A stretch of 64,000 nt of DNA, taken from the IMG/VR virus record IMGVR_UViG_3300028800_000001, positions 1 through 64,000 of that record, one strand, 5' to 3'. Every line of letters begins with the position of its first letter. Within the stretch, counting starts at the first letter, position 1. The translations under genes and the position numbers were made by a program. Positions 1,173 through 60,682 of this stretch are shown here, in pieces. The notes beneath the pieces were generated by a model that worked only from the letters and a program-made list of their open reading frames with translations, searched no databases and was not told the DNA's origin.

Positions 1173-1227
1173 AGTATACCTGCTCTCCTCTGTTACGTCA
1201 AGAATTAATTCTCTGTATTTTCAGAAA
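1173..1227 (-). promoter_or_regulatory. sigma70-type promoter with upstream palindromic box (class I)
   Basis: TTGACG-17-TATACT; TTTCTGAAA centre 1223, 22 nt from -35. Confidence 0.85.
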
Positions 1228-1243
1228 GGAGAGCAAGAAAAAA

Positions 1244-1567
1244 CTACCAGGATACCCAAAAGCGAAATTCGCCAATTCCACCATCATTGGGTGGGAACTC
1301 GTTGACGAAGAGGGTGAGAATTTCTTTTACCCAGGCAGGAGTAACTTCTTCACGGCTCCAGGTATCGAAGTCCATCCTAAAGTAGCAGCCGTTGTGGATT
1401 TCGTTTAATCCAAGTATCCAGTGCCAAAAGTTCTGATATGGACGGCTACGGTCTTCCCACGTCTTGCTATAATTGTCTATATCAATGCTATATTTCTCGT
1501 TTATCCAGGCTTCGCACTCATGATAATCATATGCTGGTTCCTGCTGCTTGGGCTTCGGTTTCTCCAC
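1244..1567 (-). CDS. hypothetical phage protein
   Basis: 107-aa ORF in operon-like run. Confidence 0.7.
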   Translation of the reverse strand: MEKPKPKQQEPAYDYHECEAWINEKYSIDIDNYSKTWEDRSRPYQNFWHWILGLNEIHNGCYFRMDFDTWSREEVTPAWVKEILTLFVNEFPPNDGGIGEFRFWVSW

Positions 1568-1835
1568 TCGTTTTCTCCTCTCTGTTGCGTAGTACTACTG
1601 CATGCCGATAATCTCCACGTGTGTGAAAGAAACGCTCATGCTCTATCTCAGAATGACGAAACACCATATCGAGCAGATCCCACCAATCGTTCGGGTCGTT
1701 GCTCTCGTATTCTGGCTCTACCTCAACGTACGCGAGCCAATCCAGGTAGTTTGCAATACCATTTTCTATTTCTGGCAGCGAGAAGACGCGTTGGTAATAC
1801 GTGCTCTCGTAGCCAAGTAAGATGTCTCTACTCAT
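1527..1835 (-). CDS. hypothetical protein, paralog of 1836-2117
   Basis: Shared YxxYY.R.FS.PEI.N.I.NYL.W ... HxEIE. Confidence 0.75.
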   Translation of the reverse strand: MSRDILLGYESTYYQRVFSLPEIENGIANYLDWLAYVEVEPEYESNDPNDWWDLLDMVFRHSEIEHERFFHTRGDYRHAVVLRNREEKTSGETEAQAAGTSI

Positions 1836-2117
1836 CTACAGCTCCTTTGCGCGTGCTTCAATTTGTGTTTCATACTTCTCGGCATTGATCACAACATCGC
1901 GGCTGTAGTTCACTAGCCCCTTGCAGACGATTTGCTGTTCAATTTCAGCGTGGTAGAGGACGGTCTCCAGGTGATATTGCCAGTCTTCTCTGTCGGTTCC
2001 TTCAACTTCAGGCTGCATACCTTCGCGACGATTCCAGGCCAGGTAATTGAGAATAGCGTTATCAATCTCTGGCTCTGAAAATGCTCGTTCGTAGTACTCG
2101 CTATAATAGACGTTCAT
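1836..2117 (-). CDS. hypothetical protein, paralog of 1527-1835
   Basis: As above. Confidence 0.75.
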   Translation of the reverse strand: MNVYYSEYYERAFSEPEIDNAILNYLAWNRREGMQPEVEGTDREDWQYHLETVLYHAEIEQQIVCKGLVNYSRDVVINAEKYETQIEARAKEL

Positions 2118-2129
2118 GCTGTTCCTTTC

Positions 2130-2348
2130 TTATAAGTAATCTTGTTCCCAGGCAGCGGGTACGCCACCAGATTCGTAGTCTTCTAGTTCTTGTGTTGGAT
2201 CATCGTGTTCATCATCTTGCGCTTCAGAAAACGACCAGGAGATACCTTGCGCCATTCCTTCGTAGATGCCGTTTTGGAGGCACTCGCGTATTTCATCAAG
2301 TGCCTCGTCTATCCCTTGCCAACTCCATCCATCAATAACTAGTTTCAT
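2130..2348 (-). CDS. small acidic hypothetical protein
   Basis: RBS, 72-aa ORF. Confidence 0.65.
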   Translation of the reverse strand: MKLVIDGWSWQGIDEALDEIRECLQNGIYEGMAQGISWSFSEAQDDEHDDPTQELEDYESGGVPAAWEQDYL

Positions 2349-2358
2349 TGCTTTCCCC

Positions 2359-2823
2359 TTATTCGTAGAGATAAAAAGTACAGTCCAGCCGCTTCAGGTT
2401 TCCTGGTTCGGTGAGCAGTTCGCGTATCCCTTGAATGCCTTTACGACTACGCCAGGGCAGACCACCAAGACCGCACCCAAGTTTAGGGAGCGCGACGCTA
2501 GTCAACCCCTCTTGCTTCACAAGTTGCTCTAGTTGCAGAATGCCAGCCATCAGGTATTCATAGGTAGAAGGTTCCTGCCACTCCACTTTGGTTGGAAAGT
2601 TGATCAACCAGGGCTCGCTTTCACGAAACAGAGTCATTGGTAAATTTGGATAAATCCGCATACTGCGGCACTGTTGCCGGTACTCTTCGAACCATGCAGG
2701 ATAGCGTTTGCGCGCCTCGTAGGCCAATCCTGCACCAGCAACACCCCGACAGTTCACCGCAACGGCAATGGCCTGTGCTTCGGTCGTGAAGATGTTTTCT
2801 CCTACTACTTCGATAAAAGGCAT
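2359..2823 (-). CDS. macrodomain protein (TARG1/DarG/Poa1p-like ADP-ribose glycohydrolase)
   Basis: Motifs G.NIF, AVNCRGVAGAGLA, INFPTK, ALPKLGCGLGGL; start MPFIEV at 2823. Confidence 0.9.
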   Translation of the reverse strand: MPFIEVVGENIFTTEAQAIAVAVNCRGVAGAGLAYEARKRYPAWFEEYRQQCRSMRIYPNLPMTLFRESEPWLINFPTKVEWQEPSTYEYLMAGILQLEQLVKQEGLTSVALPKLGCGLGGLPWRSRKGIQGIRELLTEPGNLKRLDCTFYLYE

Positions 2824-3557
2824 TAAAAATCCTCTTCCTTCCACGCAGCAACCGGCGCGGTGTCTTGTGTGAGCTCTTGCCCACACAGCAGCGCCCAATA
2901 GAGCGCATCTTGCAACAATTTTTCTCCCAGACTTTGTTGGCTATACGCCTTTTTCCAGGCAAGGCTATATTTACCCCTTATTTTTTGTAGGTAAACGTGA
3001 AGATCACCAGACTGAAAATGGTAATTCTTACCGTTAGCAACGTGCGCTGCAAGTTCACGCACATACTGATCGCTAAAGGGCATGGGATATTTTTCTACAG
3101 GGCTCGTTGCGTTACGTGCAATCATGCGCTCTAGCTCTTTGCGGTGTGCGCTCAAAAATTCGTAAAGGGTTGCAATATCAGCAACAGGGAAGAAATCACC
3201 ATCCAGGTATGCCTGATGCTCTCCTTTTTCAAAGAAGAAAGCGATGGCATCTTCGTCACGGCTAAGCACTTTTCCAGGCGGAACAAAGAGCTTACTATCA
3301 CGGGGAAACGCAACGAGAAGCCCAAGAGTGGTTGCCCAGGTGTCCAGGTAGAGTAAGAGCGTTTGCATTTCCTCCAGGCCGTACCAGCAATCTCTGAGCA
3401 TTATCCCATAGCGCAAATCGTCATTGAGCACGAGCGAAACGAAGCCATGTTCTGTAAGGGTAATATCTCCCTGTTCTCCGGCCTGTTTCTCTGCCTGCTC
3501 TTGTGAGAGGCCGTACCAGCGCAACTCTTCTATTCTGGTGAACTTTTCATCCATCAT
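2823..3557 (-). CDS. hypothetical protein
   Basis: 244-aa ORF, coupled overlaps. Confidence 0.75.
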   Translation of the reverse strand: MMDEKFTRIEELRWYGLSQEQAEKQAGEQGDITLTEHGFVSLVLNDDLRYGIMLRDCWYGLEEMQTLLLYLDTWATTLGLLVAFPRDSKLFVPPGKVLSRDEDAIAFFFEKGEHQAYLDGDFFPVADIATLYEFLSAHRKELERMIARNATSPVEKYPMPFSDQYVRELAAHVANGKNYHFQSGDLHVYLQKIRGKYSLAWKKAYSQQSLGEKLLQDALYWALLCGQELTQDTAPVAAWKEEDF

Positions 3558-3748
3558 TCTTTTCCTCCAATGTGTACTACAAGCGTCTCTTCTTGTAGTG
3601 CTTTGTAATTCCAGCAGCGCTCATCTAAAGTGGCGCGTACATACGCGTTTATCTCTTCTTGCGTCATCGGGTGCGGAAGGCGCACAATACAGCGCTGCTC
3701 TAGCGTTGCCTGTACCGTGACACAAATCTCAATTGGGGTAGTCTTCAT
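3554..3748 (-). CDS. hypothetical protein
   Basis: 64 aa, ATGA overlaps. Confidence 0.65.
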   Translation of the reverse strand: MKTTPIEICVTVQATLEQRCIVRLPHPMTQEEINAYVRATLDERCWNYKALQEETLVVHIGGKE

Positions 3749-3933
3749 ACACTTCCTCGCTTTAAGAGCTCTTGAAAGGTTACGCTTCCATCGCTCAGCG
3801 CTTCGAAACGTTCTTGCAAGACTCCAGCGCGTTCCAAAAACACGATTTGATATTCTGAGTCGCTGCCACAGGCACTTTGTAATCGTTCTAAAGCAGTCAA
3901 CAAGGTATAAATCTCTTCTTGTGTGAACTTCAT
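3745..3933 (-). CDS. hypothetical protein
   Basis: 62 aa, coupled. Confidence 0.65.
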   Translation of the reverse strand: MKFTQEEIYTLLTALERLQSACGSDSEYQIVFLERAGVLQERFEALSDGSVTFQELLKRGSV

Positions 3934-3949
3934 AGTTTTTTCTTTCTTG

Positions 3950-4276
3950 TTATCGATAGCGATAAGTAAATTCTTCAGGATAGTTTTTCATACGGGCCAA
4001 AAATGATTTTGCTTCGCCAAGATCGGTGAAGACCTCTTGCTCACGATGGGCAAATACCAGATAAGCATTCTGCGTATCAAGGTAATCCATGCTGAGATCC
4101 TGTGAGCCAGGAAGCACCTGGGCAAGTTGGAACTCGCTCTGATGAGCGTAAGGATAGGTAACTTCTAAGATGCCGAAGAGACTTTTGCGAATCTTTTTAG
4201 TCAGGCGTACTCTCGCTCGTACAAACTTGAGTCCATAAGCTTCACCGCGTGGATTGTAAAAGGTTTCAAAACGCAT
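3950..4276 (-). CDS. hypothetical protein
   Basis: RBS GGAGGAG, 108 aa. Confidence 0.7.
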   Translation of the reverse strand: MRFETFYNPRGEAYGLKFVRARVRLTKKIRKSLFGILEVTYPYAHQSEFQLAQVLPGSQDLSMDYLDTQNAYLVFAHREQEVFTDLGEAKSFLARMKNYPEEFTYRYR

Positions 4277-4278
4277 GT

Positions 4279-5046
4279 TTACTCCTCCTGGTATTTTTCG
4301 CTAAGACGTTCAAATTCCTCTGCGGTAAAGTCAAAGGTTTCTTGCCAGTTTGTCAGTAATTCACTGGTGATCTTATGGACGGTTTGTAGCGCCTCCACTT
4401 TGTTAACCGATACTTTTCCCGTTTGATAGGCGCTGGCCTGTATCTCTATGTCACCCCAGTATTCACGGAGCGAAGTACTTGCCAGTGCCTTTTCCTGGTA
4501 TAGTTCGTAACAGGCGCGCTGCTCTTCATCTGCGCTGTGTGCCGCTTCCTCTTGCCACTGTGTTGCCAGCGCATCAAGTAAGGTACGCGTATGCGTCTCT
4601 ATACAATTTTTGCAGGCAAATTGTTTGAACTCGTTTTCTGCTTTGAGAGCAAATTCTCCCGTGAGCGCACGTCCACCGCAAATCCCGCAAGTAATGATGT
4701 AGGGCTCGATAAGCTCTGCGCAACAGGCATCGCAATAGGCTCCATCCTCAAAACTGCCATCATCAAGAAAGACCGAAATGGGTCCGTCATGATCGCGTGG
4801 GACAATGCTTTTAAGGATTTTGACGTTTTCGTCAAAGATGATCTCGTCATCATCATCACGATCATAGTCGTCAAAGTAGGCATATTTCTCTCGACGCGGC
4901 CAGCGCTCCATCATTGGTGCGTTGTCTGAGCCATGATAGTCAGGCCCATTGAGAAGATAGCTAATCTCTTCGGATGTGAGTCCTGTACATGCTGTTTGTG
5001 CGCAGTAGGTACCCGCGCACATAATCAGGCCAGCAATGCTATACAA
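4279..5046 (-). CDS. Cys-rich (putative Zn-binding) hypothetical protein
   Basis: Several CxxC pairs, 255 aa. Confidence 0.75.
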   Translation of the reverse strand: MYSIAGLIMCAGTYCAQTACTGLTSEEISYLLNGPDYHGSDNAPMMERWPRREKYAYFDDYDRDDDDEIIFDENVKILKSIVPRDHDGPISVFLDDGSFEDGAYCDACCAELIEPYIITCGICGGRALTGEFALKAENEFKQFACKNCIETHTRTLLDALATQWQEEAAHSADEEQRACYELYQEKALASTSLREYWGDIEIQASAYQTGKVSVNKVEALQTVHKITSELLTNWQETFDFTAEEFERLSEKYQEE

Positions 5047-5449: not shown

Positions 5450-5492
5450 GATTTTTCTCCTTTCTAGAGAAATGTAAAAAACTGACGAAATG

Positions 5493-5810: not shown

Positions 5811-5822
5811 AGCTGTACTCCT

Positions 5823-6035: not shown

Positions 6036-6047
6036 AGTGTTGTTCCT

Positions 6048-6868: not shown

Positions 6869-6885
6869 GTTTTCCTCTTTCTTTT

Positions 6886-7260: not shown

Positions 7261-7316
7261 AGTATAGAGTGACAAGAAAGGAAAGTCAAGAATTATTTCT
7301 CTGTATTTTCAGAAAT
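7261..7316 (-). promoter_or_regulatory. class I promoter + palindromic box
   Basis: TTGACT-17-TATACT; box centre 7311, 22 nt from -35. Confidence 0.85.
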
Positions 7317-7950: not shown

Positions 7951-8361
7951 TCAGTCATAGAGTCCCATCTCTTGTGAGATGGCAGCGATTTCAGCAAGAC
8001 CTGTTTCACGTTCCTGCGCACGCCGTTGCTGAAACACCAGAACATCTTCTAATAAGACGCGCCTGTGTGTGCCAACACGAATAAAGGGGATAACACCATT
8101 TTCTAACAGTTTCACTAAGTGCGGCCTGGACATACTTAAAAGATCTGCCACTTGTTGTGTGGTCATTTCCTTTTGTCCAGCGATAAGGGCAACGTAATGC
8201 CCACGCGCTAATTGATGTGCGGCTTCCGCAAGTAAAATGCGCAGTGAAATTGGCAGAGAAACGGTTTGTTCTCCTATTTGCATCTGCGCACTTTCTTGTT
8301 GAAGCAATTTGCGTATGCTCTTGAGCACTTCTTGATCTTGTGGGTCGCCTTGAACAATCAT
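7951..8361 (-). CDS. excisionase-like HTH_17 DNA-binding protein
   Basis: MTTQQVADLLSMSRPHLVKLLENGVIPFIRVGTHRRV. Confidence 0.85.
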   Translation of the reverse strand: MIVQGDPQDQEVLKSIRKLLQQESAQMQIGEQTVSLPISLRILLAEAAHQLARGHYVALIAGQKEMTTQQVADLLSMSRPHLVKLLENGVIPFIRVGTHRRVLLEDVLVFQQRRAQERETGLAEIAAISQEMGLYD

Positions 8362-8426
8362 ATAAGTACACCTTTCTTTTTCTACGAGAAGTATACTATA
8401 TAATCGAAACAAAAGCAATAAGCGAA

Positions 8427-14903: not shown

Positions 14904-14959
14904 AGTATACGGCAGCTCTTACCAAAAGACAAGCGTTTCTTCTATGAATATTCAGAAAT
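14904..14959 (-). promoter_or_regulatory. class I promoter + palindromic box
   Basis: TTGTCT-17-TATACT; box centre 14954, 22 nt from -35. Confidence 0.8.
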
Positions 14960-18701: not shown

Positions 18702-18757
18702 ATCATAGGCCATTTTCTGAAAAACGTCAAGACTTTTTTCTGTGAATATTCAGAAAG
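18702..18757 (-). promoter_or_regulatory. class I promoter with a second box inside the -35/-10 spacer
   Basis: TTGACG-17-TATGAT; box centre 18752 (22 nt); extra TTTTCTGAAAA at 18713-18723. Confidence 0.8.
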
Positions 18758-18766: not shown

Positions 18767-18856
18767 AAAAAAAGAGAAGAGGTGTGATGCCCCTTCTCTC
18801 CTGAAAAGAACCGATGCGCTCCGACTTACAAGAAGTCGAAAGAAACTGCATGAACG
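18767..18856 (-). ncRNA. putative ~90-nt small RNA divergent from the array
   Basis: Extended -10 TGCTATACT (18871-18863), hairpin 18822-18838, U-tailed terminator 18767-18799, no ORF. Confidence 0.5.
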
Positions 18857-18862
18857 AAAGCT

Positions 18863-18918
18863 AGTATAGCAGAAAATTCGGAAGAAGTCTCTCATTTTTC
18901 AGAAAAATATGCTATACT
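18863..18918. promoter_or_regulatory. back-to-back extended -10 promoters with perfect palindrome ATTTTTCAGAAAAAT
   Basis: TGCTATACT on both strands (18863-18871 minus; 18910-18918 plus); palindrome 18894-18908. Confidence 0.7.
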
Positions 18919-18955
18919 GCGTGCAACGAAATATCTGCGTCTTCCCAAGAGAAGC

Positions 18956-19981
18956 GTTTGAATCAGTTTATACGTAAGGCAATACAGCGGTATGAACCAA
19001 TTGTGAGGTTAGTCTAAAGAAATATGGGTGAGTAAATCTATTTGTAAGAGCATAAGATGAGAGCGAGACACCAAATTACTTGTTTCACATGACATGTTCG
19101 AGTCATTAATAGTGTTGCTTCGGTATGAGCGTACGAACCAATAAACTTGTATATCTACATCAGCGTGTGAGTCATGATGTTCGCGTTTCCTACACTCAGT
19201 ACGACTCCAATAATGTGTCCGTTCCTTATCATAGTAGGAATCTCGGTGCGTGTTTGCTCAATAGATTAGTATGAACACTTAGTACATGTTGTTTCAATTG
19301 ACAGGTGCGATCCGGTTCAGCAGCGCATCAATACTTTTGCGAGAGTCATTCTTTCTGTGAAGTGTCTTGAGAAAGGTATGAGCCCAATAGGTAGTCAAGA
19401 GCAATCTAGAAGTACGAATTCTTGAAAACGTGTTTCCATGATATATGTGTGAACCATTGTGTAGGCAATTCATCTGATTTGTCTGAGTCGCTAACAACGT
19501 TTCTCTCATTACATTTGCACGATCCAACAAAGCAGTAAGAATACCATAGAAGTGAGAATCAATATGTAGGTCTTTTCGTTCAATTCGTATGAACCATCAG
19601 GGCAGTAGTTTTTATACAAGGTGTGAGTCGCAATAATAGTTGCTTCAGGTTTGAGGATCGAGTCACCAACGCAGTATTATCAGCAACACTGAACGATTGT
19701 AAAATGATAGTTTTACCATATCGTGAGTAAGAGCCAACCTAGCCGTTGCGTCGCATAAAGGGAGCGAACGAATAGAGCAGTCAATTCGATATTGAAGTTT
19801 GAGTCTACCAGGAGTTTGTATCATGGCTGGGGCGTGAGCGTTTGAATTACTGATACTGTATAATCAAACAACAAGTATGAGGCGTGATTTTATAAAAGAC
19901 GTTCGAGCTGTTCAAAGGAGATCTTTCGAAGCTTGGGAGCGAATCGTTTTAAATGTCATTTCAATAAGCGCGTATGAAATA
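18956..19981 (+). repeat. dual-repeat ~35-nt-period interspaced array (TIGR-like), probably transcribed as ncRNA
   Basis: About 30 units; repeat A GTNYGARYCA every 34-37 nt, repeat B GT-N4/5-YCA at offset ~18; no credible ORF; promoter upstream, terminator downstream. Confidence 0.8.
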
Positions 19982-20011
19982 AGAGAGAAGCAGGGGGTTT
20001 GCTTCTCTCTT
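19981..20011. terminator. bidirectional terminator
   Basis: AAGAGAGAAGC/GCTTCTCTCTT 11-bp stem between array and convergent peptidase gene. Confidence 0.8.
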
Positions 20012-22172: not shown

Positions 22173-22229
22173 AGTATATGCGAAAGAAAAGCTTTTTGTC
22201 AATAGTTTCTTCTATTTATTTTCAGAAAG
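22173..22229 (-). promoter_or_regulatory. class I promoter + box
   Basis: TTGACA-18-TATACT; centre 22224 (22 nt). Confidence 0.85.
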
Positions 22230-22941: not shown

Positions 22942-22997
22942 ACTATAGCAGAAACCTTCGCTCCCTGTCAAGAGTTTCTTCTATTTATTTTCTGAAC
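22942..22997 (-). promoter_or_regulatory. class I promoter driving the non-coding tRNA-like unit
   Basis: TTGACA-18-TATAGT; centre 22993 (22 nt). Confidence 0.8.
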
Positions 22998-25180: not shown

Positions 25181-25236
25181 AGTATAGGCTTTTTTCACAA
25201 GCGCGTCAAGACTTTTTTCTAGTTATTTTCAGAAAG
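25181..25236 (-). promoter_or_regulatory. class I promoter + box
   Basis: TTGACG-17-TATACT; centre 25231 (22 nt). Confidence 0.85.
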
Positions 25237-29957: not shown

Positions 29958-30012
29958 AGTATAGCGTTTTTCTTCTCAAGAGTCAAAAATCTTCATGGTA
30001 TTTTCTGAAAAA
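29958..30012 (-). promoter_or_regulatory. promoter + box (20-nt spacing variant)
   Basis: TTGACT-17-TATACT; TATTTTCTGAAAA centre 30006. Confidence 0.75.
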
Positions 30013-32451: not shown

Positions 32452-32506
32452 AGTATACCCCGCATCTTGTCTTTTATCAATACTTTCTTCTTTGTATTTT
32501 CAGAAG
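32452..32506 (-). promoter_or_regulatory. class I promoter + box
   Basis: TTGATA-17-TATACT; centre 32502 (22 nt). Confidence 0.8.
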
Positions 32507-32764: not shown

Positions 32765-32809
32765 CTTTTTTCTCCTTGAATTTTGTTTTCGTTTATTTCT
32801 TATACAGGA

Positions 32810-32864
32810 ATGATACCTCATTTGGAAGAAAGCGTCAAGCGTTTTCGCTGTGTATTTTCAGAAA
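32810..32864 (-). promoter_or_regulatory. class I promoter + box
   Basis: TTGACG-17-TATCAT; centre 32860 (22 nt). Confidence 0.8.
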
Positions 32865-33274
32865 TCAAGTGTACTTTCAATACTGGTTAAATCAATAATG
32901 CGTTGTGTCAAATGGTCTTGCGTTTGTTCAAGAGTGCGCAGTAAGATAGTGCGATGCGGCTGCTCAGGAAGATCACGCATGGTTTCCATCACTTCGCGCA
33001 GTTCTTTTTCCAGAGCTTCTCGTTGCAATTGTACGCCACACAGGATATCGCCTTTGGCGCGCCCATAATAGAGTACACTCTTTGGCTCTCTTGAGGTGGT
33101 AAACGACTCCAGTTCAACGCCTAGCACCTGCTCGTAGCCCCTGAGCACTTTCTCCGAAGGCGTTTCTTTGCCGTTCTCGATACCAGAAAGATAGCCTTTG
33201 GTAAATCCTATGCGCCGCGCCATCTCGGTGAGGGAAATCTTTGCGGCTAGCCGCGCTGCACGTAAGTCAATCAT
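32858..33274 (-). CDS. XRE-family HTH regulator
   Basis: LRAARLAAKISLTEMARRIGFTKGYLSGIENGK; TGA stop inside the box. Confidence 0.9.
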   Translation of the reverse strand: MIDLRAARLAAKISLTEMARRIGFTKGYLSGIENGKETPSEKVLRGYEQVLGVELESFTTSREPKSVLYYGRAKGDILCGVQLQREALEKELREVMETMRDLPEQPHRTILLRTLEQTQDHLTQRIIDLTSIESTLDF

Positions 33275-33645
33275 AGCAAACTGTCCTCTACAATGAGCAG
33301 GTTACTAATACGTAGCTCCAGCGCTCTGCGCTCGGCAGCAACCGCTTCTTCTGCTGTCAGCACACCATCAAGCTTTACCTCTAGCCGCTCACGGTAAACC
33401 GTAATAGCTGCAAGCATATCTTTGCGTGTTTGCAGATCATAGAAAGGAACGGTTTCTTTGGGAGCCGGAAGCGTTGCTTCGAGAATGATCTCGTACTGCC
33501 GGACAACTTTCTCCGTTACCGGTTTGTGCCCGTTCTCAATACCAGAAAGATGTCCTTTGGAGACACCCATACGTTTTGCCATCTCGCTCAGAGAAACATT
33601 CTTTGCCAAGCGCGCCTCACGTAGACTGCTCTTTGTTTCTTTCAT
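33271..33645 (-). CDS. XRE-family HTH regulator (tandem paralog)
   Basis: LREARLAKNVSLSEMAKRMGVSKGHLSGIENGH. Confidence 0.9.
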   Translation of the reverse strand: MKETKSSLREARLAKNVSLSEMAKRMGVSKGHLSGIENGHKPVTEKVVRQYEIILEATLPAPKETVPFYDLQTRKDMLAAITVYRERLEVKLDGVLTAEEAVAAERRALELRISNLLIVEDSLL

Positions 33646-35983: not shown

Positions 35984-36046
35984 AAAAAATGGAGCTATAC
36001 TTAGAAATAGCTCCATCAAACGCTTTCTTCAATGTATTTTCAGAAG
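35984..36046 (-). terminator. terminator hairpin occupying a degenerate class I promoter (box retained)
   Basis: ATGGAGCTAT/ATAGCTCCAT + T6; TATTTTCAGAA centre 36042. Confidence 0.65.
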
Positions 36047-39094: not shown

Positions 39095-39532
39095 CTACAA
39101 AGTTTTCTTTCGATTAAGTTTGACACCTTCGTTTGCAATGGGTCTTTTATTGTATCTTTCTGGCAAGTGTGACCCATTTTTATTCACTATCGCGTTTAAG
39201 CAAGGCCCAAGACGATAGATAAGCTCTTCCTCGCATGTTTGGATAAAAACATCGTGCATTGCTATTTGCTCATACTCTTTTGCCGTAATTAATTCTTTAA
39301 GTTCCCATATCTCCATCGTCCAATTAAGAGATTCTGGCATATTGTCAAGAATAATTTGACCAACCCTGTCGGGCCAGGGAAGGCGAGCGCCTTTTCCCAG
39401 GTGTTCAAGTAGTCTGGTATAAGGATGAATAGAGCGCCCAACATAGAAGATAGTATCTTCATCTCTGTAGACATAGAGGCATTGCTCCTCCTCGAATGTT
39501 TCCATTGCTTTGCCAATAGTAGTTTGTATCAT
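39095..39532 (-). CDS. GIY-YIG nuclease family protein
   Basis: CLYVY...FYVGRS...RLLEH...E...P.LN. Confidence 0.8.
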   Translation of the reverse strand: MIQTTIGKAMETFEEEQCLYVYRDEDTIFYVGRSIHPYTRLLEHLGKGARLPWPDRVGQIILDNMPESLNWTMEIWELKELITAKEYEQIAMHDVFIQTCEEELIYRLGPCLNAIVNKNGSHLPERYNKRPIANEGVKLNRKKTL

Positions 39533-40638
39533 TCGTCATCTTCCTCGCTAATAATAACCCCATCGTTTGCGATAGAGCCGCGCTTTGCATAGTAAAGGGG
39601 CATGTGCGGAGTTTTCCAGCCTCCACCACTTTGCACTTTATCAAGCGGCGTGCCATTTTTGAGTGCGTCATAGACCCAAAAGTGTCTGGCATCGTGAGGT
39701 GAGAGATTTTTTACCCCAATTGTTTCTCCAAGAGTACGAACACGGGCATTGATAGCGCGTCTCGTAATGCGTTTGTTTTCGTAGCCCAGGAAAAGTGGCC
39801 CTGCCGTTCTTGGTATTCCAGCGACGCCTTCCTTGAGCATTCCTATATAATTCTCAGCCGCAATACGCGTATGCTTTTTAAGTTTTTGTTTATCGTGAAG
39901 ATTTGTCTTTTCATGATAGATATGCACATTGCCGGTCTGAAGGGAAAAATCTTCAATATTAAGATTGGCAACTTCGCCACAGCGTAATGCATGCTCAAAA
40001 AGCAATCCCGTAAGTAAGGCATCTCTCGCGGCCATTAATTCCTGCTGTTCCTTACTTTGTTTCTTCGGCTGCGTCGTCGCTCTCTTGATTTTAAAAACTT
40101 TTGACGTTTCTATTTCGACCGCATTTTCTTTTTTATTTCCAATGCGTGTTGGCACACCATCAGCGATTCGCTCATGATCACGATTTACTGCGAGCTTTCC
40201 ACTTTTGCCTCGCACCAATTGAATGAGATGTAATTCTTCGAGAGAAAGGAGTCCGGCCTGTTCAACAAGGTTACAATACTTCTTGATCGTGGTGAGGTAG
40301 ACGCAGATCGATCCCATTGCATACCCTTTGTTTTCCAACCAGACCTGAAAGCCAGAAACCAGGGCATCATTTATACCTTCCCAACTTTCAGGAATTTCGT
40401 AGAGTTCTTCTGATGCTCTGCCAACGCCAACAGCATAGAGGTAATTGCTGAAATGAGTCAGATCATTTTTCTGCCGCCTGCGGGTGTTTTCGGTGAGTCC
40501 TTTATGGTATTCGAGAAAGATATTGCTTGCCCTTGCTTTTCTGGCAGCGTTTCCAGCGCGATACAAATCGTCAGGATACAGTTGATCTGAAACACTGGTA
40601 TCCGTGACAAAGATAGTGATCGCCTTTTCTTCTTCCAT
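39529..40638 (-). CDS. tyrosine recombinase/integrase
   Basis: ALRCGEVA.L, K, SPHDARH, GGW, LYY (R-K-H-R-W-Y catalytic set). Confidence 0.92.
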   Translation of the reverse strand: MEEEKAITIFVTDTSVSDQLYPDDLYRAGNAARKARASNIFLEYHKGLTENTRRRQKNDLTHFSNYLYAVGVGRASEELYEIPESWEGINDALVSGFQVWLENKGYAMGSICVYLTTIKKYCNLVEQAGLLSLEELHLIQLVRGKSGKLAVNRDHERIADGVPTRIGNKKENAVEIETSKVFKIKRATTQPKKQSKEQQELMAARDALLTGLLFEHALRCGEVANLNIEDFSLQTGNVHIYHEKTNLHDKQKLKKHTRIAAENYIGMLKEGVAGIPRTAGPLFLGYENKRITRRAINARVRTLGETIGVKNLSPHDARHFWVYDALKNGTPLDKVQSGGGWKTPHMPLYYAKRGSIANDGVIISEEDDE

Positions 40639-40706: not shown

Positions 40707-40761
40707 ATTATAGAACATTCTTTCTTTGCCGTCAAGGGTTATTTCTTGGTATATTCAGAAG
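40707..40761 (-). promoter_or_regulatory. class I promoter driving integrase
   Basis: TTGACG-17-TATAAT; centre 40757 (22 nt). Confidence 0.85.
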
Positions 40762-40824
40762 ATGGCTGCGCAGGCCGATGTATGATATACTGGTCGCTAC
40801 TTTATTGAATTGAAAGGGAAAATT

Positions 40825-41217: not shown

Positions 41218-41248
41218 CCGCAAGTGTTTTTCTATGCATATTCAGAAG
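41218..41248 (-). promoter_or_regulatory. decayed class I promoter copy
   Basis: caagtgtttttctatgcatattcagaa resembles 14930-14957; -35/-10 degenerate. Confidence 0.5.
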
Positions 41249-42146: not shown

Positions 42147-42212
42147 GCTTGACAGACGTGATATGCTCCAGATTATCACAAGGTCGAAAATTTTCAGAAA
42201 GGATAAAAGCCA

Positions 42213-42969: not shown

Positions 42970-43012
42970 ATTCTAGCACGCCCCTGCCGTAGCAGTCAAG
43001 CATTTTCAGAAG
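42970..43012 (-). promoter_or_regulatory. class II promoter (box 9 nt from -35)
   Basis: TTGACT-18-TAGAAT; centre 43008. Confidence 0.7.
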
Positions 43013-43459: not shown

Positions 43460-43501
43460 ATTCTAGCACGTGCTCTCAAAACAGTCAAGTATTTTCAGAA
43501 G
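43460..43501 (-). promoter_or_regulatory. class II promoter (box 9 nt from -35)
   Basis: TTGACT-17-TAGAAT; centre 43497. Confidence 0.7.
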
Positions 43502-44160: not shown

Positions 44161-44216
44161 ATTGTGCCTCAATCGCACCGTTCCGTCAAGCCTTTTTTCA
44201 CTGTATATTCAGAAAG
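44161..44216 (-). promoter_or_regulatory. class I promoter + box
   Basis: TTGACG-17-CACAAT; centre 44211 (22 nt). Confidence 0.75.
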
Positions 44217-54074: not shown

Positions 54075-54132
54075 AGTATAGCCGAGAATGAGGAAGAAGA
54101 CAAGTATTTCTTCTCTGTATTTTCAGAAAATA
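54075..54132 (-). promoter_or_regulatory. class I promoter with perfect 15-bp palindrome TATTTTCAGAAAATA
   Basis: TTGTCT-17-TATACT; centre 54125 (22 nt). Confidence 0.85.
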
Positions 54133-55163: not shown

Positions 55164-55180
55164 TAGGCCAGGGAACCTTC

Positions 55181-55755: not shown

Positions 55756-55756
55756 C

Positions 55757-56712: not shown

Positions 56713-56720
56713 AATACTCC

Positions 56721-57224: not shown

Positions 57225-57396
57225 TCGATTTCTCCTGTAGAAGCGCTTCATGTTTTTTGAGAAGTGCGAGCAGTTTCAATGCTTCGTCAGGCTCCAGCCA
57301 AAGGCGATCCGTATGCCCCTCACGTAGGAAAAGACATCCATCATCCTTGATTTCAGCATTCAGCCAATACTTTTTATCCAAGAACTCAAAGTTCAT
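57214..57396 (-). CDS. small hypothetical protein
   Basis: 60 aa; resembles neighbour 57386-57592. Confidence 0.6.
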   Translation of the reverse strand: MNFEFLDKKYWLNAEIKDDGCLFLREGHTDRLWLEPDEALKLLALLKKHEALLQEKSNGL

Positions 57397-57592
57397 CTTC
57401 TTTGCTCCCCTTTTGCGCGGCCTCTTGCAAGAACCTCATATGCGCTTGAAGGAAATCAAGAATGGTTTGTGCTTCTTCCACGCTGTAGCTGGTGTAGTTT
57501 TGGGCTCCATCATAGATGATAAACACACCGTTATTCCAATCGTTGACTTCTAGCTGAAAGCGACCATTGCTCATCTCTCGTGTAAATTCCAT
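57386..57592 (-). CDS. small hypothetical protein
   Basis: 68 aa. Confidence 0.65.
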   Translation of the reverse strand: MEFTREMSNGRFQLEVNDWNNGVFIIYDGAQNYTSYSVEEAQTILDFLQAHMRFLQEAAQKGSKEDEL

Positions 57593-57954
57593 TACCAAAT
57601 CCTTTCCCAGTTTTCATTTTTTACCCAATCCTCATCGAAACAGGTGGCGAATGCGTGATAATAAGACGCAAGACAGCGTGCCACCTGTATTGCCTTCGTC
57701 TGGTTCGCAATGTTCAAGTGAACCACTTGCCTTGCGTTCCATAAGTTCACCGGAAGATACGGCCCCCAATAGCTTTCTGCAAGCTCAATATCAAAATGAA
57801 CGTCAGCACACCAACGCGTGAGCGCCGTTTCGTTATCTATCTCAATGCGTTCTGCACCTTTTCGGTGCGTCCATATCCAGGGTGTCTCAAATAATGGCGA
57901 AAGAGTGGCTCGTGGCAGCGCACCCTTTCGCATACAAAACAGTTGAATATCCAC
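57592..57954 (-). CDS. hypothetical protein
   Basis: 120 aa. Confidence 0.7.
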   Translation of the reverse strand: MDIQLFCMRKGALPRATLSPLFETPWIWTHRKGAERIEIDNETALTRWCADVHFDIELAESYWGPYLPVNLWNARQVVHLNIANQTKAIQVARCLASYYHAFATCFDEDWVKNENWERIW

Positions 57955-58319
57955 TAGTCTGCCTCTTCGTCCTCATCATCCCAACGGTCATCATCTTCTT
58001 CCTCTTCTTCATCCGCGCCCATCAGAAAGTCAATTTTGATCGAGGTGATTGTGCCGCCTTCAATTGTGGCGTACACTGGATACGTCCCATCACCACAGCC
58101 GGTCTGTGCAACCACGCCGTACTGGTTGTAGTCTTTATACTGTGGATATGGGACACCGTCTAGACTATTACAGAAATCCACCCACTCTGGCCCAATCTCT
58201 TTTTCTACAGGGGTTAACTTCTCATCGCGCCGCTTGTCGCGATAAAAGTAACAGGGATCACCGATGTATACCATGCCGCTATCGACACAAAAGTCTCCAA
58301 TTTTTACTATTTTCTCCAT
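57954..58319 (-). CDS. DUF4241-like hypothetical protein
   Basis: IG.FCVDSG..YIGDPCY...TG.GDGTYPVY. Confidence 0.7.
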   Translation of the reverse strand: MEKIVKIGDFCVDSGMVYIGDPCYFYRDKRRDEKLTPVEKEIGPEWVDFCNSLDGVPYPQYKDYNQYGVVAQTGCGDGTYPVYATIEGGTITSIKIDFLMGADEEEEEDDDRWDDEDEEAD

Positions 58320-58930
58320 TGATAATCTTCCTCTTTCCATATTTTGTGATTAACTATTTCGCTGACGATGTCGCCTCCGACACCGTATTTCTCGCCAATT
58401 TGCTTTTGGGTAACTCCTCCACCAGCGTAAATCTTTCTGATCTCTTGAGCCATTTCAAAATTCAACTTTGCTGTCCTATGTGTTCCCGAAACTACTGAAT
58501 CTAGCGTATTTTGACTATTCGTTCCTGCATAGAGATGGTCAGGATTGACACATGAAGGATTGTTACATTTGTGACATACATATAATCCATCTGGCACAGC
58601 TCCTTTCACAAGTTCATACGAATATTTATGGGCAGCTATGGTTTTATTTTTCAAACTGAATTTTCCGTATCCACGGCGGTTTTTCTGCTTAATCCAAATC
58701 CAGCAATAATTTGTTTTTTCTACGCTCTTCCAAAAACGTGCTTCAGAAGATACTCCAAATCTTGTAGCTTTTGATCTTCCTAATTCTCTTCGGCGTAAGA
58801 GATAGTAAACAACACCCTGAGTTACACCATACTCTTCTCCAAGTTTTCTCTGGCTTATGCCGCCTTCCGCATATCTTTTTCTAATGGCTATTATTTGTTC
58901 ATCAGATAACGGATATTCTTTACCTTGCAT
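58307..58930 (-). CDS. HNH homing endonuclease flanked by two HTH motifs
   Basis: CWIW...GYG...AHKYSY...CHKCNNPSCVNPDHL..GT..QN; AT-rich. Confidence 0.9.
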   Translation of the reverse strand: MQGKEYPLSDEQIIAIRKRYAEGGISQRKLGEEYGVTQGVVYYLLRRRELGRSKATRFGVSSEARFWKSVEKTNYCWIWIKQKNRRGYGKFSLKNKTIAAHKYSYELVKGAVPDGLYVCHKCNNPSCVNPDHLYAGTNSQNTLDSVVSGTHRTAKLNFEMAQEIRKIYAGGGVTQKQIGEKYGVGGDIVSEIVNHKIWKEEDYQWRK

Positions 58931-58965
58931 ATGCAGTCCACACTAATCCCGCGTCCACACAAAAC

Positions 58966-59382
58966 TCACCTATTTTTACTATTTTTTCCATTGCTCTGTA
59001 CTCCTTTTTGTTTTATCTGATAATAGACTGATAACTCTCGTAATTGTTCTTCAGCTTTTTGCATCGTTTCGCGCTTGGTGGTATAGGGCATTTCTCCGCC
59101 CCGTATCTTCTGCTCCATCTTGCCATCGCTTGCCCATACATCGTAGTACCAAACGCCGCCTTTGCTCCATGACGGCCTGTACACGGTTGCGTAGAGGAAC
59201 AGGCGTAAGTTCATGCCAAGAATGCGCCGTACTTCTCGAATGCGTTCTAAGAGCACATCTTTGGCGTCCTCTGAATACTCCAGACTCGCAAGATCTTCCC
59301 TACTAAGATAATCGGCTGGCTCCTCAACGCTCGCCAGATCAAGATCAACATACTCAATATAGCGATGAAGATTGCTGTTCAT
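58966..59382 (-). CDS. hypothetical protein
   Basis: 138 aa. Confidence 0.7.
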   Translation of the reverse strand: MNSNLHRYIEYVDLDLASVEEPADYLSREDLASLEYSEDAKDVLLERIREVRRILGMNLRLFLYATVYRPSWSKGGVWYYDVWASDGKMEQKIRGGEMPYTTKRETMQKAEEQLRELSVYYQIKQKGVQSNGKNSKNR

Positions 59383-59699
59383 AGTCGCACCCGCGTTTTG
59401 AGGTCTTCGAACTCCTCTTGTGTGAGCTTCCAGAATTCTTTTACTGAAATTTCTCCAGTGAGCGCATATTGCGCTTCTAACCGCTCAACGAGCGTCCCTT
59501 GTGGCGCATCATCCATAAGCAGAATTGCAACAAAGTTCTTCGCCTCTTCAAGAAGACCATTGCGCAGCGCATCATCTTCTTGTGAATTTATGTATTTTTC
59601 ACGATAGGCTGTTGCCATGCGAAAGAACTGCATCGCTCGAAACTGGCTTTTCTCTGGTAGCGATTTTATCGTTCTGTAGACGCTCAGGTAATTATCCAT
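59379..59699 (-). CDS. hypothetical protein
   Basis: RBS GGGAG before MDNYLS. Confidence 0.7.
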   Translation of the reverse strand: MDNYLSVYRTIKSLPEKSQFRAMQFFRMATAYREKYINSQEDDALRNGLLEEAKNFVAILLMDDAPQGTLVERLEAQYALTGEISVKEFWKLTQEEFEDLKTRVRL

Positions 59700-59997
59700 T
59701 GTGATGCTCCCAGGTTGGTTCATCGGTACTGCCGATTTGTGCTTCGGCATGATTGTATACGTCACGTGCAAAGTGGAGGCAGCCAAGTTGTGCAAGCGTT
59801 GCTTCCAAGACAGAAGCGCTTTGCGCAAAGTACCCACTCGTGAAGCGGCTCGTTTTACTGGCCTCTTCGCCTGTTGGGTCTTGTTTTAGTGACTCTCTCA
59901 GTGACTTGAGGCGCTCTTCTAATGCGTTAATACTGCCGAGCAGCGTATGATTGGCTTGATCGAGATTGCGATCAAGATCGTTATTGGGATCAAACAT
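59692..59997 (-). CDS. coiled-coil hypothetical protein
   Basis: 101 aa. Confidence 0.7.
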   Translation of the reverse strand: MFDPNNDLDRNLDQANHTLLGSINALEERLKSLRESLKQDPTGEEASKTSRFTSGYFAQSASVLEATLAQLGCLHFARDVYNHAEAQIGSTDEPTWEHHNG

Positions 59998-60286
59998 GTT
60001 CTTTGTCTCTTTCTATAACTGACTGCATATTGGAGAGATAGCCGCCACAAAAACCAAGCAGGGCGACCTCAGAGGCGTCTGGCTGGCTTTCTGCTCTGGC
60101 GCACGCCATCAAGGCTTCCTGATCGAAAATCCAGGCGTGATCTTTGGCGTATTCATTGGCGAAGAAGTGATAGCCGTTAATAACGCCCCATATAAACTCC
60201 TCGTTTTCCTCTTCGCTGCGAGCGCACGCGGCCTCTGTGAGTCCAATCCTTGCCAGAAACGCTGGCACCCATTTTGGAGTGTTCAT
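59990..60286 (-). CDS. hypothetical protein
   Basis: ATGA overlap. Confidence 0.65.
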   Translation of the reverse strand: MNTPKWVPAFLARIGLTEAACARSEEENEEFIWGVINGYHFFANEYAKDHAWIFDQEALMACARAESQPDASEVALLGFCGGYLSNMQSVIERDKEHV

Positions 60287-60591
60287 GCGCGCACCCACAT
60301 TCCCTGCTCGTCGGTACTCCAACCAGCAGTCTGTACTACTTCGCAGGCTTCTTGTAGAAAGCGTTGCTGCTCCTGGCGTACGACGCTGTCGTACTGCGCA
60401 GGCGTAATCTTTTTGATGTATTGTTTCCCACCGTTATAGCCGTAGGTTACTGTATGCTCTTCGCTGCGCATGGTCGTTAAAACCGCACGAAAACGGTTGT
60501 CACCGATGCTCTCCAGGGAAAACTGAAATAGAGCGTGGCGTGTCTCTTCGGAAAGACGAGGCTTTTGCGGGGTAAAATTAGCATAATCCAT
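60283..60591 (-). CDS. hypothetical protein
   Basis: First gene after promoter. Confidence 0.7.
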   Translation of the reverse strand: MDYANFTPQKPRLSEETRHALFQFSLESIGDNRFRAVLTTMRSEEHTVTYGYNGGKQYIKKITPAQYDSVVRQEQQRFLQEACEVVQTAGWSTDEQGMWVRA

Positions 60592-60627
60592 TGACGTTCT
60601 CACTTTCACTTTTTTGTCTACAAACGA

Positions 60628-60682
60628 AGTATAGCGCAGGAACGTGAGAACGTCAACGATTTTTTCACTGTATTTTCAGAAC
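60628..60682 (-). promoter_or_regulatory. class I promoter + box
   Basis: TTGACG-17-TATACT; centre 60678 (22 nt). Confidence 0.85.

What the first reader, a model, noticed from the sequence alone, without database searches (positions are those of the whole stretch)
1173..60682. Element-wide regulon: palindrome TTTC(A/T)GAAA fixed 22 nt upstream of the -35 box in 13 promoters
Seen: box centres at 1223, 7311, 14954, 18752, 22224, 22993, 25231, 32502, 32860, 40757, 44211, 54125 and 60678 each lie exactly 22 nt from the first T of a TTGACN/TTGTCT/TTGATA -35 box, with a 17-18-nt spacer and a TATACT-like -10. Variants: 20 nt (30006), 9 nt (43008, 43497), decayed (36042, 41244), and boxes overlapping promoters (18718, 18901, 42196). 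The fullest form is TATTTTCAGAAAATA (54118-54132). Inference: the site of a dimeric factor at about -57 that activates early promoters (class-I-activator-like position) and represses promoters it overlaps, including the array promoter. Candidate factors: the XRE pair, or HTH_17 proteins at 7951, 27428 and 44249.
Basis: partly seen in the sequence, partly recalled or inferred. Interest (0 to 1): 0.75.

Follow-up and report, generated by a model that had tools for sequence, protein, structure and literature searches.

The report
Phage early promoters with UP-like block
A 327-kb uncultivated soil phage drives about fifty gene clusters from near-identical host-type promoters with a rigidly placed 26-base upstream block; that block looks more like an RNA-polymerase "UP" docking element than a palindromic regulator site, so this is a clean but fairly ordinary phage promoter family.

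Summary
All 13 listed promoters exist at the stated coordinates. The whole 327,295-bp phage genome, of which the window is the first 64 kb, carries 49 of them with the box centre exactly 22 nt before the TTG of the -35.

The "palindrome" reading is weak:
- Only TTC/GAA is symmetric.
- The outer left arm is unconserved, while the mirrored right-arm positions are nearly invariant.
- The centre is T in 47 of 49 sites.
- Conservation runs unbroken from the box into the -35.

The block holds two direct (T/A)GAAAA(T/A)A units 11 bp apart. They are centred near -53 and -42, where the RNA polymerase alpha-CTD UP subsites lie. Its 5' end matches the start of the E. coli rrnB P1 UP element. The core promoters are near consensus, and boxes outside promoters are not enriched.

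A diverged relative phage keeps the block while spacers and flanks are randomised, so the block is under selection.

Best reading: strong host sigma-A "early" promoters of UP/-35/-16/-10 type. Still possible: a sequence-specific factor competing with alpha-CTD. The box lies 2-6 mismatches from the CodY consensus. No transcript data were available.

The parts
1173..1227 (-). Promoter: box centre 1223, -35 TTGACG, 17-nt spacer, -10 TATACT
7261..7315 (-). Promoter: box centre 7311, TTGACT, 17 nt, TATACT
14904..14958 (-). Promoter: box centre 14954 (GAATATTC subtype), TTGTCT, 17 nt, TATACT
18702..18756 (-). Promoter: box centre 18752, TTGACG, 17 nt, TATGAT. A second box (18714-18722) lies inside its spacer, and a terminator hairpin with T-run abuts its upstream edge.
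22173..22228 (-). Promoter: box centre 22224, TTGACA, 18 nt, TATACT
22942..22997 (-). Promoter: box centre 22993 (centre A), TTGACA, 18 nt, TATAGT; long leader
25181..25235 (-). Promoter: box centre 25231, TTGACG, 17 nt, TATACT
32452..32506 (-). Promoter: box centre 32502, TTGATA, 17 nt, TATACT
32810..32864 (-). Promoter: box centre 32860, TTGACG, 17 nt, TATCAT, followed by the conserved leader; sits at the 3' end of the XRE pair
40707..40761 (-). Promoter: box centre 40757, TTGACG, 17 nt, TATAAT; drives the tyrosine integrase gene (39529-40638)
44161..44215 (-). Promoter: box centre 44211, TTGACG, 17 nt, weak -10 CACAAT
54075..54129 (-). Promoter: box centre 54125 (fullest palindrome, 54118-54132), TTGTCT, 17 nt, TATACT
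60628..60682 (-). Promoter: box centre 60678, TTGACG, 17 nt, TATACT. The copy in a contig 86% identical to this region differs by one base, in the spacer.
29958..30010 (-). Variant promoter: box 30006 lies 20 nt before TTGACT; -10 TATACT
42970..43012 (-). Variant promoter: the box unit abuts the -35 (9 nt), TTGACT, 18 nt, TGC-TAGAAT
43460..43501 (-). Variant promoter: the box unit abuts the -35 (9 nt), TTGACT, 17 nt, TGC-TAGAAT
36016..36046 (-). Decayed copy: upstream block intact, -35 and -10 degraded
41218..41248 (-). Decayed copy: block present, no clear -10
18894..18918 (+). Perfect 15-nt palindrome ATTTTTCAGAAAAAT followed by TGC-TATACT (extended -10, no -35). Candidate promoter of the 1.1-kb non-coding stretch 18920-20010.
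40783..40791 (+). TGA-TATACT extended -10 diverging from the 40757 promoter; the box centre would lie near -41 of this start
42192..42200 (.). Isolated TTTCAGAAA overlapping a ribosome-binding site; probably a chance occurrence
32858..33645 (-).
7951..8418 (-). HTH_17 protein, one of nine HTH_17 matches in the genome
27428..27982 (-). HTH_17 protein

Best explanation
**What it is.** These are the host-RNA-polymerase (sigma-A / sigma-70 type) promoters of a 327-kb phage, presumably its early class. Each is one unit of about 55 bp. Numbering assumes +1 lies 7 nt after the -10.
- An upstream block, tTCTGAAAATAC-A.A-GAAAAAA-..C, at about -61 to -36.
- A -35, TTGAC(g).
- A 17-nt spacer with TG at -17/-16.
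- A -10, TATACT.

**How it most likely works.** The upstream block works as a two-part UP element. Its two direct (T/A)GAAAA(T/A)A units lie 11 bp apart, centred near -53 and -42. They would dock the two alpha-subunit C-terminal domains of the host polymerase. That would make already near-consensus promoters maximally competitive right after infection. A phage-encoded sigma factor, itself transcribed from such a promoter, would later redirect the polymerase.

**The palindrome.** TTTC(A/T)GAAA is largely a by-product of the 5' edge (TTC) meeting the first GAAAA unit. Its apparent outer left arm is often the T-run of an upstream terminator.

**Shown versus inferred.** Shown: the family, its rigid spacing, its asymmetry, and selection on the block. 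Inferred: alpha-CTD binding, start sites, early timing, and a Bacillota host.
For: **Rigid coupling to the -35.**
- 49 promoters have the box centre exactly 22 nt before TTG.

**One continuous, asymmetric block.**
- Information content is high from -4 through +26 relative to the box centre. The left arm is unconserved, and the centre is T in 47 of 49 sites.

**Selection rather than recent copying.**
- The mid-spacer holds 0.02-0.15 bits per position, against a small-sample bias of 0.04, while the block holds 1-2 bits.
- A relative phage shares 50-80% protein identity with this one. In three positional orthologues, identity is 0.83 in the box and 0.83 in the -35. It is 0.40 in the flank, 0.43 in the spacer and 0.36 downstream.

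**UP-element anatomy.**
- The A-tracts fall at about -56 to -51 and -45 to -39.
- B. subtilis alpha-CTD-dependent promoters have AT-rich subsites centred at -43 and -53 (PMC4495994).
- The rrnB P1 UP element begins CAGAAAAT 23 nt before its TTG (PMC7822876).
- In the 9-nt variants, the box unit sits where the proximal A-tract normally sits.

**Strong core promoters.**
- TTGACG in 25 of 49, a 17-nt spacer in 45 of 49, TATACT in 32 of 49, and T/G at -17/-16.
- This matches the "uber UP/-35/TGn/-10" design of T4 early promoters (PMC2988021).

**No operator-like excess.**
- TTTCWGAAA outside these promoters occurs 9 times against about 12 expected.

**They look like working promoters.**
- 37 of 49 are followed, within 10-61 nt of the predicted +1, by a strong RBS and an ORF on the same strand.

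**Context for a temporal switch.**
- The phage encodes one sigma-70-family protein, at about 119.2-119.8 kb, downstream of a box promoter.
Against: - **Too sequence-specific for a typical UP element.** Natural UP elements are degenerate AT-rich tracts. This block has invariant G and C positions: C-1, G+1 and G+12 in 49 of 49, and C+8 in 43 of 49. It carries roughly 35 bits in total. The E. coli UP consensus leaves the TTCTG edge unexplained.
- **Match to the UP consensus is uneven.** The proximal half matches well. The distal half matches only in part.
- **The box resembles a CodY site.** It is 2-6 mismatches from the CodY consensus, median 4.
- **Some boxes sit where alpha-CTD cannot act.** These are in spacers or in front of extended -10 elements: 18718, 18901 and 250841.
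- **A lineage-wide switch at -36** (C here, G in 7 of 7 promoters of the relative) points to co-evolution with some reader protein of unknown identity.
- **No transcript data.** No start-site, timing or binding data exist; no RNA run was listed.
- **The host is unknown.**
Confidence: 0.55

Rival explanations
1. The block is the site of a phage-encoded sequence-specific protein that switches all ~50 promoters together. Candidates are an HTH protein, an immunity repressor of a temperate or plasmid-prophage lifestyle, or an early shut-off factor. It would act either as an activator touching alpha-CTD/sigma-4, or more plausibly by displacing alpha-CTD from the UP region. This is compatible with the block also being an UP element.
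For: - Information content is very high, with invariant G/C positions.
- The motif occurs only in this phage and one relative among IMG/VR, GTDB genomes, annotated phages and JGI metagenomes.
- Position -36 switches lineage-wide, C to G, in the relative.
- More symmetric boxes lie in repressor-like positions: 18718 in a spacer, and 18901 and 250841 directly before extended -10 elements.
- The phage has an integrase under one of these promoters, an XRE pair, and nine HTH_17 matches.
Against: - The exact 22-nt spacing is not needed for an occluding repressor.
- The asymmetry argues against a symmetric dimer.
- There is no excess of free-standing sites.
- The near-consensus cores need no activator.
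- An activator of early promoters would have to be injected with the DNA.
- No candidate protein is tied to the site. The gene behind the doubly boxed 18752 promoter has no recognisable DNA-binding fold.
Confidence: 0.2
2. The box is a binding site for the host global regulator CodY, which senses GTP and branched-chain amino acids. This would tie phage early transcription to host nutrition. The mechanism would resemble host Spo0A at phi29 A2b, where the regulator blocks alpha-CTD from the UP element.
For: - The CodY consensus is AATTTTCWGAAAATT.
- The 49 boxes differ from it at 2-6 positions, median 4, while random 15-mers have a median of 11. The right half has a single mismatch in 43 of 49.
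- CodY reads mainly DNA shape and tolerates four or more mismatches (PMC10415144).
- Bacillota-like signals are present: AAGGAG ribosome sites, a -16 region, and look-alikes of the phage sigma factor that are mostly Bacillota.
- There is precedent for a host regulator acting over a phage UP element (PMC2731898).
Against: - The left half-site is not conserved in either phage lineage.
- The T that the structural paper reports as nearly invariant and needed for binding (its T15, here +7) is A in 36 of 49 boxes.
- The usual overlapping second motif at a 9-nt offset has 5-8 mismatches in 40 of 49 sites, range 4-11.
- Conservation extends well beyond a CodY site.
- Free-standing boxes are not enriched.
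- The host is unidentified, so the presence of CodY is unknown. The phage encodes no CodY HTH.
Confidence: 0.1
3. The upstream block has no function of its own. The similarity reflects spread of a promoter(-leader) cassette by duplication, recombination or gene conversion, as with the mobile promoter-stem-loop cassettes of T4-type phages.
For: - BLAST finds about 100-nt promoter-plus-leader copies at 75-86% identity.
- At least 11 promoters share a conserved leader.
- About 10-12 promoters directly abut a terminator hairpin.
- Two block subtypes (GAAAATAC and GAATATTC) look like lineages.
- The lineage-wide switch at -36 could be concerted evolution.
Against: - Spacers between -35 and -10 are randomised while the block keeps 1-2 bits per position.
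- Positional orthologues in a phage with only 50-80% protein identity keep the block, but not the flanks, spacers or leaders.
- That pattern indicates purifying selection on the block itself.
Confidence: 0.07

Closest known systems
T4 early promoters ("uber" UP/-35/TGn/-10 promoters; PMC2988021)
   Same: Dozens of dispersed host-polymerase promoters in a large lytic-type genome. They have near-consensus -35 and -10 elements, an extended -10 region, UP-like A-tracts, and extra consensus positions beyond the host rules.
   Different: The host type is different, probably Gram-positive. The upstream block here is sharper, with invariant G/C positions and exact 22-nt spacing. No Alt-like modifier was looked for.
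UP elements read by RNA polymerase alpha-CTD (E. coli rrnB P1; B. subtilis subsites at -43/-53; phi29 A2b, A2c, C2)
   Same: The position is -60 to -38, with two A-rich subsites one helical turn apart. The proximal subsite matches the A-run consensus. The 5' end, C(A/T)GAAAAT, equals the start of the rrnB P1 UP element at nearly the same distance from the -35.
   Different: It is much less degenerate than natural UP elements. The distal half, and the TTCTG, C+8 and G+12 invariants, are not part of the UP consensus. Alpha-CTD dependence is untested.
Sigma-A-type early promoters of large Bacillota phages (Kayvirus: 58 early promoters, TRTGN extension, 17-bp spacer; SPO1-like sigma cascades; PMC7698491)
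   Same: There are many strong host-type early promoters with a -16 region, plus a phage sigma factor for later classes.
   Different: In Kayvirus the upstream region was reported as too ambiguous to define. Here it is the best-conserved part of the promoter.
CodY box AATTTTCWGAAAATT of Bacillota (PMC10415144)
   Same: The core TTTC(A/T)GAAAAT is identical. 40 of 49 sites have 4 or fewer mismatches.
   Different: The left arm is not conserved. The key T at the 3' end is usually A. There is no good overlapping partner site. The position is fixed next to the -35 rather than variable.
Host Spo0A sites over the phi29 A2b UP element (PMC2731898)
   Same: A regulator site about 26 bp upstream of a phage early -35 acts by keeping alpha-CTD off the UP element. 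This is a template for how a factor could use the block.
   Different: There are a few sites in phi29 against about 50 here. The motif is different, and no binding is shown here.
Dispersed asymmetric operators of large temperate phages (P1 C1 operators, mycobacteriophage L5 stoperators; recalled from memory, not checked here)
   Same: There are many oriented, asymmetric copies of one site spread over a phage genome, and an integrase and XRE-type regulators are present here.
   Different: Those sites overlap core promoters or lie within transcription units at variable positions. Here the position upstream of the -35 is fixed to the base.

Membership tests
Sigma-70/sigma-A -35/-10 promoter | TTGACA-like -35, 17 +/- 1 nt spacer, TATAAT-like -10 | tested here: met
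   TTGAC(G/T/A) in 37 of 49 and TTGTCT in 10. Spacer 17 nt in 45 and 18 nt in 4. TATACT in 32 of 49, the rest one step away.
Sigma-70/sigma-A -35/-10 promoter | Correct placement and orientation in front of genes | tested here: met
   37 of 49 are followed within 10-61 nt of the predicted +1 by an RBS and an ORF on the same strand. 44 of 49 lie on the strand that carries most genes.
Sigma-70/sigma-A -35/-10 promoter | Transcription start 6-8 nt after the -10 | not testable with these tools
   No RNA run was listed for this phage. Only DNA metagenomes hold it.
UP element (alpha-CTD site) | A/T-rich element between about -60 and -38, with subsites near -42/-43 and -52/-53 | tested here: met
   GAAAAT lies at about -56 to -51 and GAAAAAA at about -45 to -39, 11 bp apart. 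Reference positions come from PMC4495994.
UP element (alpha-CTD site) | Match to the UP consensus sequence | tested here: inconclusive
   The proximal A-run matches. The distal half matches only in part, though it equals the first 8 nt of the rrnB P1 UP element. The invariant G/C positions are not in the consensus.
UP element (alpha-CTD site) | Stimulation depends on alpha-CTD and needs no other protein | not testable with these tools
   Needs in vitro transcription or footprinting.
CodY box | 15-nt motif within about 4-5 mismatches of AATTTTCWGAAAATT | tested here: met
   2-6 mismatches, median 4; random 15-mers have a median of 11.
CodY box | Both half-sites conserved (pseudo-palindrome) | tested here: not met
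   The left half has 2-3 mismatches and 0.04-0.29 bits at -5 to -7. The right half has 1 mismatch. The same holds in the relative phage.
CodY box | Overlapping second motif at a 9-nt offset, with the shared T conserved | tested here: not met
   The motif at +9 has 5-8 mismatches in 40 of 49 sites (range 4-11). Position +7 is A in 36 of 49 and T in 9 of 49.
CodY box | The host encodes CodY | not testable with these tools
   The host is unidentified. The phage has no CodY HTH. A Paenibacillus genome used as a control does.
Class-I activator site (dimer upstream of -35) | Two-fold symmetric site | tested here: not met
   Only TTC/GAA is symmetric. The centre is T in 47 of 49.
Class-I activator site (dimer upstream of -35) | Variant spacings keep helical phase; the core promoter is suboptimal | tested here: not met
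   Variant spacings are 20, 21, 12 and 9 nt. The cores are near consensus.
Dispersed phage repressor operators | Many oriented copies across the genome | tested here: met
   49 oriented copies across 327 kb.
Dispersed phage repressor operators | Sites overlap core promoter elements or occur independently of promoters | tested here: not met
   Nearly all copies lie at a fixed place upstream of a -35. Free-standing boxes are not enriched.
Mobile promoter-stem-loop cassettes (T4-type PeSL) | Early promoter joined to a stem-loop/terminator and spread as a unit | tested here: inconclusive
   About 10-12 of 49 abut a terminator hairpin. A subfamily shares a roughly 100-nt promoter-leader. Gene shuffling at the cassettes was not examined.

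The most novel reading that the evidence does not exclude
The upstream block is not just an UP element. It is the common operator of one sequence-specific protein that competes with alpha-CTD, so that all ~50 host-polymerase promoters of a 327-kb phage hang on a single switch. That protein would be either the host nutrient sensor CodY or a phage immunity/shut-off factor. The lineage-wide C-to-G change at -36 in the relative phage would then mark co-evolution of site and reader.
Probability: 0.25. Interest if true: 0.65.

Novelty: new member of a known kind. Interest (0 to 1): 0.35.

Why it matters
- **A transcription map for an uncultivated phage.** The work places 49 host-type promoters, many paired with terminators, and identifies a phage sigma factor for later genes.
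- **An unusually sharp upstream promoter module.** If it is an alpha-CTD site, it is a well-defined natural UP element from a probable Gram-positive system, where UP rules are poorly known. It would also be a compact, strong promoter part.
- **A possible single switch.** If a factor reads the block instead, one protein would gate the whole early programme.
- **Overall.** The general design, strong extended early promoters, is well known from T4, SPO1-like phages and Kayvirus.

Tried and rejected
- **Transcript evidence.** No RNA run was listed, so start sites and timing could not be checked.
- **Relatives by motif.** IMG/VR gave only near-identical fragments (99.2-99.96% identity). A looser pattern gave only single chance hits.
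- **Bacterial genomes.** There were 15 hits. Eight were in Poribacteria and are one orthologous coding sequence, not promoters. One Paenibacillus promoter-like hit was isolated.
- **Annotated phages.** BLAST of the promoter found nothing below E = 0.5, and megablast of 8 kb found nothing.
- **Relatives by protein.** DNA polymerase III alpha gave no close phage. The portal protein searched against 401 Bacillota genomes gave only matches at 33% identity or less, so no host was found.
- **Structured RNAs and repeats.** Rfam, tRNA and tandem-repeat scans of the window were empty.
- **A second promoter class.** GTATACTG did not define a clear class. K-mer searches for a late-promoter motif gave nothing convincing.
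- **Candidate box-binder.** The gene behind the doubly boxed 18752 promoter has no Pfam match and only generic helical look-alikes.
- **Nucleoid-type binder.** The genome has no HU/IHF-family protein.
- **Complex prediction.** A protein-DNA prediction was not run, because the tool gives no verdict for DNA partners.

Full report
**Setting**

The window is the first 64 kb of a 327,295-bp virus record with a 127-bp end overlap. GC content is about 46%.

Gene content:
- a tape-measure protein;
- an HK97-type portal carrying an intein;
- DNA polymerase III alpha and a Ro60/TROVE protein;
- 11 tRNA genes at 206-215 kb;
- one sigma-70-family protein at about 119.2-119.8 kb;
- a tyrosine integrase at 39529-40638;
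- two adjacent XRE genes at 32858-33645;
- nine HTH_17 matches across the genome.

Only rhizosphere DNA metagenomes hold the phage, and no RNA run was listed. No annotated phage is close.

The host is unknown. Several features point to Bacillota, by inference only:
- strong AAGGAG ribosome sites;
- sigma-A-like promoters with a -16 region;
- look-alikes of the phage sigma factor that are mostly Bacillota.

TTTCWGAAA occurs 10 times in the window against 1.4 expected.

Most genes lie on the minus strand, so the sites must be read there. Read that way, each of the 13 listed centres shows TTC(T/A)GAA. The TTG of the -35 starts exactly 22 nt after the centre. A 17- or 18-nt spacer and a TATACT-like -10 follow.

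Across the genome:
- The simple pattern gives 41 minus-strand hits at this spacing and 0-4 at every other spacing.
- A consensus scan gives 49 promoters, 44 on the minus and 5 on the plus strand.
- A weight matrix built only from positions +4 to +21 excludes both the palindrome core and the -35. Almost every strong hit it finds still carries both, so the parts travel together.
- 37 of 49 are followed within 10-61 nt of the predicted start by a strong ribosome site and an ORF on the same strand.

**The site is not a palindrome in any functional sense**

- The conserved block runs without a break from -4 to +26 relative to the box centre.
- Mirror positions differ sharply: 0.05, 0.04 and 0.29 bits at -5, -6 and -7, against 1.9, 1.47 and 0.94 bits at +5, +6 and +7.
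- The centre is T in 47 of 49 sites when read in the direction of transcription.
- Only TTC and GAA are symmetric.
- The weak T-richness further left partly reflects terminators. About 10-12 promoters directly abut a hairpin followed by a T-run.

**The block is under selection**

Between the -35 and the -10 the sequences are randomised, at 0.02-0.15 bits against a small-sample bias of 0.04. The block holds 1-2 bits per position.

The metagenome scan also found short contigs of a diverged relative phage. These contigs share 50-80% protein identity with this genome and are syntenic with it. The relative's seven promoters read TTCTGAAAATAC...GAA..AA..G-TTGAC, and again nothing is conserved left of TTC.

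In three positional orthologues, identity by region is as follows:

| Region | Identity |
|---|---|
| Box | 0.83 |
| -35 | 0.83 |
| Upstream flank | 0.40 |
| Spacer | 0.43 |
| Downstream | 0.36 |

One position differs lineage-wide. The base before the -35 is C in 36 of 41 promoters here and G in 7 of 7 in the relative.

**What the block looks like**

It contains two direct units, (T/A)GAAAA(T/A)A, 11 bp apart.

If transcription starts 7 nt after the -10, the A-runs lie at about -56 to -51 and -45 to -39. These are the positions of the distal and proximal alpha-CTD subsites:
- B. subtilis promoters that depend on alpha-CTD have AT-rich patches centred at -53 and -43 (PMC4495994).
- The E. coli rrnB P1 UP element begins CAGAAAAT 23 nt before its TTG (PMC7822876). 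The phage has C(T/A)GAAAAT 22 nt before its own.

The two 9-nt variants (43008, 43497) put the box unit exactly where the proximal A-run normally sits. The three 20-nt variants move both units together. So the unit is interchangeable between the two subsites. That fits two alpha-CTD docking sites and does not fit one dimer site.

**The cores need no help**

- TTGACG or a close variant, a 17-nt spacer in 45 of 49, TG at -17/-16, and TATACT in 32 of 49.
- This is the "uber" UP/-35/TGn/-10 design described for T4 early promoters (PMC2988021).
- It also resembles the 58 early promoters of a staphylococcal Kayvirus. There, however, the upstream part was too vague to define (PMC7698491).

**Arguments for a factor**

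- The block is far more sequence-specific than natural UP elements. C-1, G+1 and G+12 are invariant, and the UP consensus does not explain TTCTG.
- The core equals that of the CodY box AATTTTCWGAAAATT. The 49 sites differ from that consensus at 2-6 positions, median 4, against a median of 11 for random 15-mers.

Against CodY specifically:
- The left half is not conserved.
- The T reported as nearly invariant and needed for binding is A in 36 of 49 boxes.
- The usual partner motif at a 9-nt offset is poor.

- 18718, inside a promoter spacer;
- 18901, a perfect 15-nt palindrome in front of TGC-TATACT;
- a similar arrangement at 250841.

Free-standing boxes as a class are not enriched, at 9 against about 12 expected. 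The 11-nt form occurs 4 times against 1.4 expected.

phi29 offers a mixed model. Host Spo0A binds about 26 bp upstream of the A2b -35 and represses by keeping alpha-CTD off the UP element (PMC2731898). A regulator using this block in the same way cannot be excluded.

**Verdict**

The promoter-regulon idea stands. The dimeric-palindrome and class-I-activator reading does not.

| Reading of the block | Estimate |
|---|---|
| UP-like module in strong host-type, presumably early, promoters | about 0.55 |
| Phage factor | about 0.2 |
| Host CodY | about 0.1 |
| Functionless relic | under 0.1 |

The kind of system is known. This member is unusually sharp, and the phage is uncultivated.

Noticed in passing
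window 18920-20010 (+): A stretch of about 1.1 kb without a convincing ORF, downstream of the palindrome plus TGC-TATACT promoter. It holds loosely repeated units: GTATGA recurs 7 times, GTGAGT 4 times and GAGTCA 4 times, at spacings of roughly 110-290 nt. It has no Rfam match and no TRF array.
   Followed up: partly
window 18775-18868 (-): A minus-strand TGC-TATACT extended -10 sits back to back with the plus-strand one as a 24-nt inverted repeat (18863-18886 / 18895-18918). About 60 nt further on lies a strong terminator hairpin. This is a candidate small RNA.
   Followed up: no
window 32766-32810 and genome 86.8, 89.8, 117.0, 153.3, 154.1, 216.7, 217.3, 257.5, 303.7, 309.9 kb: At least 11 promoters share a conserved transcribed leader, T(C/T)CTGTATAAGAAATAAACGAAAAC, before the ribosome site. 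It forms repeats of about 100 nt together with the promoter, at 75-86% identity. Its function is unknown; a translational or stability signal is possible.
   Followed up: partly
window 18913, 62584 (+); genome 73348, 172119, 174423, 180324, 216074, 250852, 283385: A possible second promoter type: TGC-TATACT (extended -10) with neither a -35 nor an upstream block.
   Followed up: partly
window 39529-40638 (-): A tyrosine integrase gene sits directly behind box promoter 40757 in a 327-kb phage. Two XRE genes lie 6 kb downstream on the same strand. This hints at a temperate or plasmid-prophage lifestyle.
   Followed up: no
genome 119.2-119.8 kb (L148:1132-1755, -): The only sigma-70-family gene of the phage (region 2 match). 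It lies in an operon served by a box promoter and next to a dCMP deaminase gene. It is the likely driver of later transcription.
   Followed up: partly
genome 199.5-204.6 kb and 289.3-291.9 kb: The portal protein and a helicase both carry intein domains. A Ro60/TROVE plus vWA protein lies next to the portal gene and near the tRNA cluster (206-215 kb).
   Followed up: no
L161-L167, L176, L188 (sample Ga0265324): A diverged relative phage (50-80% protein identity) has the same promoter design, but with G instead of C directly before the -35 in all 7 promoters seen. Several of its promoters sit at places where this genome has none, which indicates promoter turnover.
   Followed up: partly
L020:3808-5357 vs genome 255.3-256.3 kb: A contig otherwise 99.2-99.8% identical to this genome carries a replaced segment of about 1.5 kb. 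The segment resembles the gene at 111.4-112.6 kb at 69% identity.
   Followed up: no
L024, L026, L028, L031-L034, L036 (Poribacteria genomes): The 30-nt search pattern hits one orthologous coding sequence in eight Poribacteria genomes. The match is a coincidence and not a promoter.
   Followed up: yes
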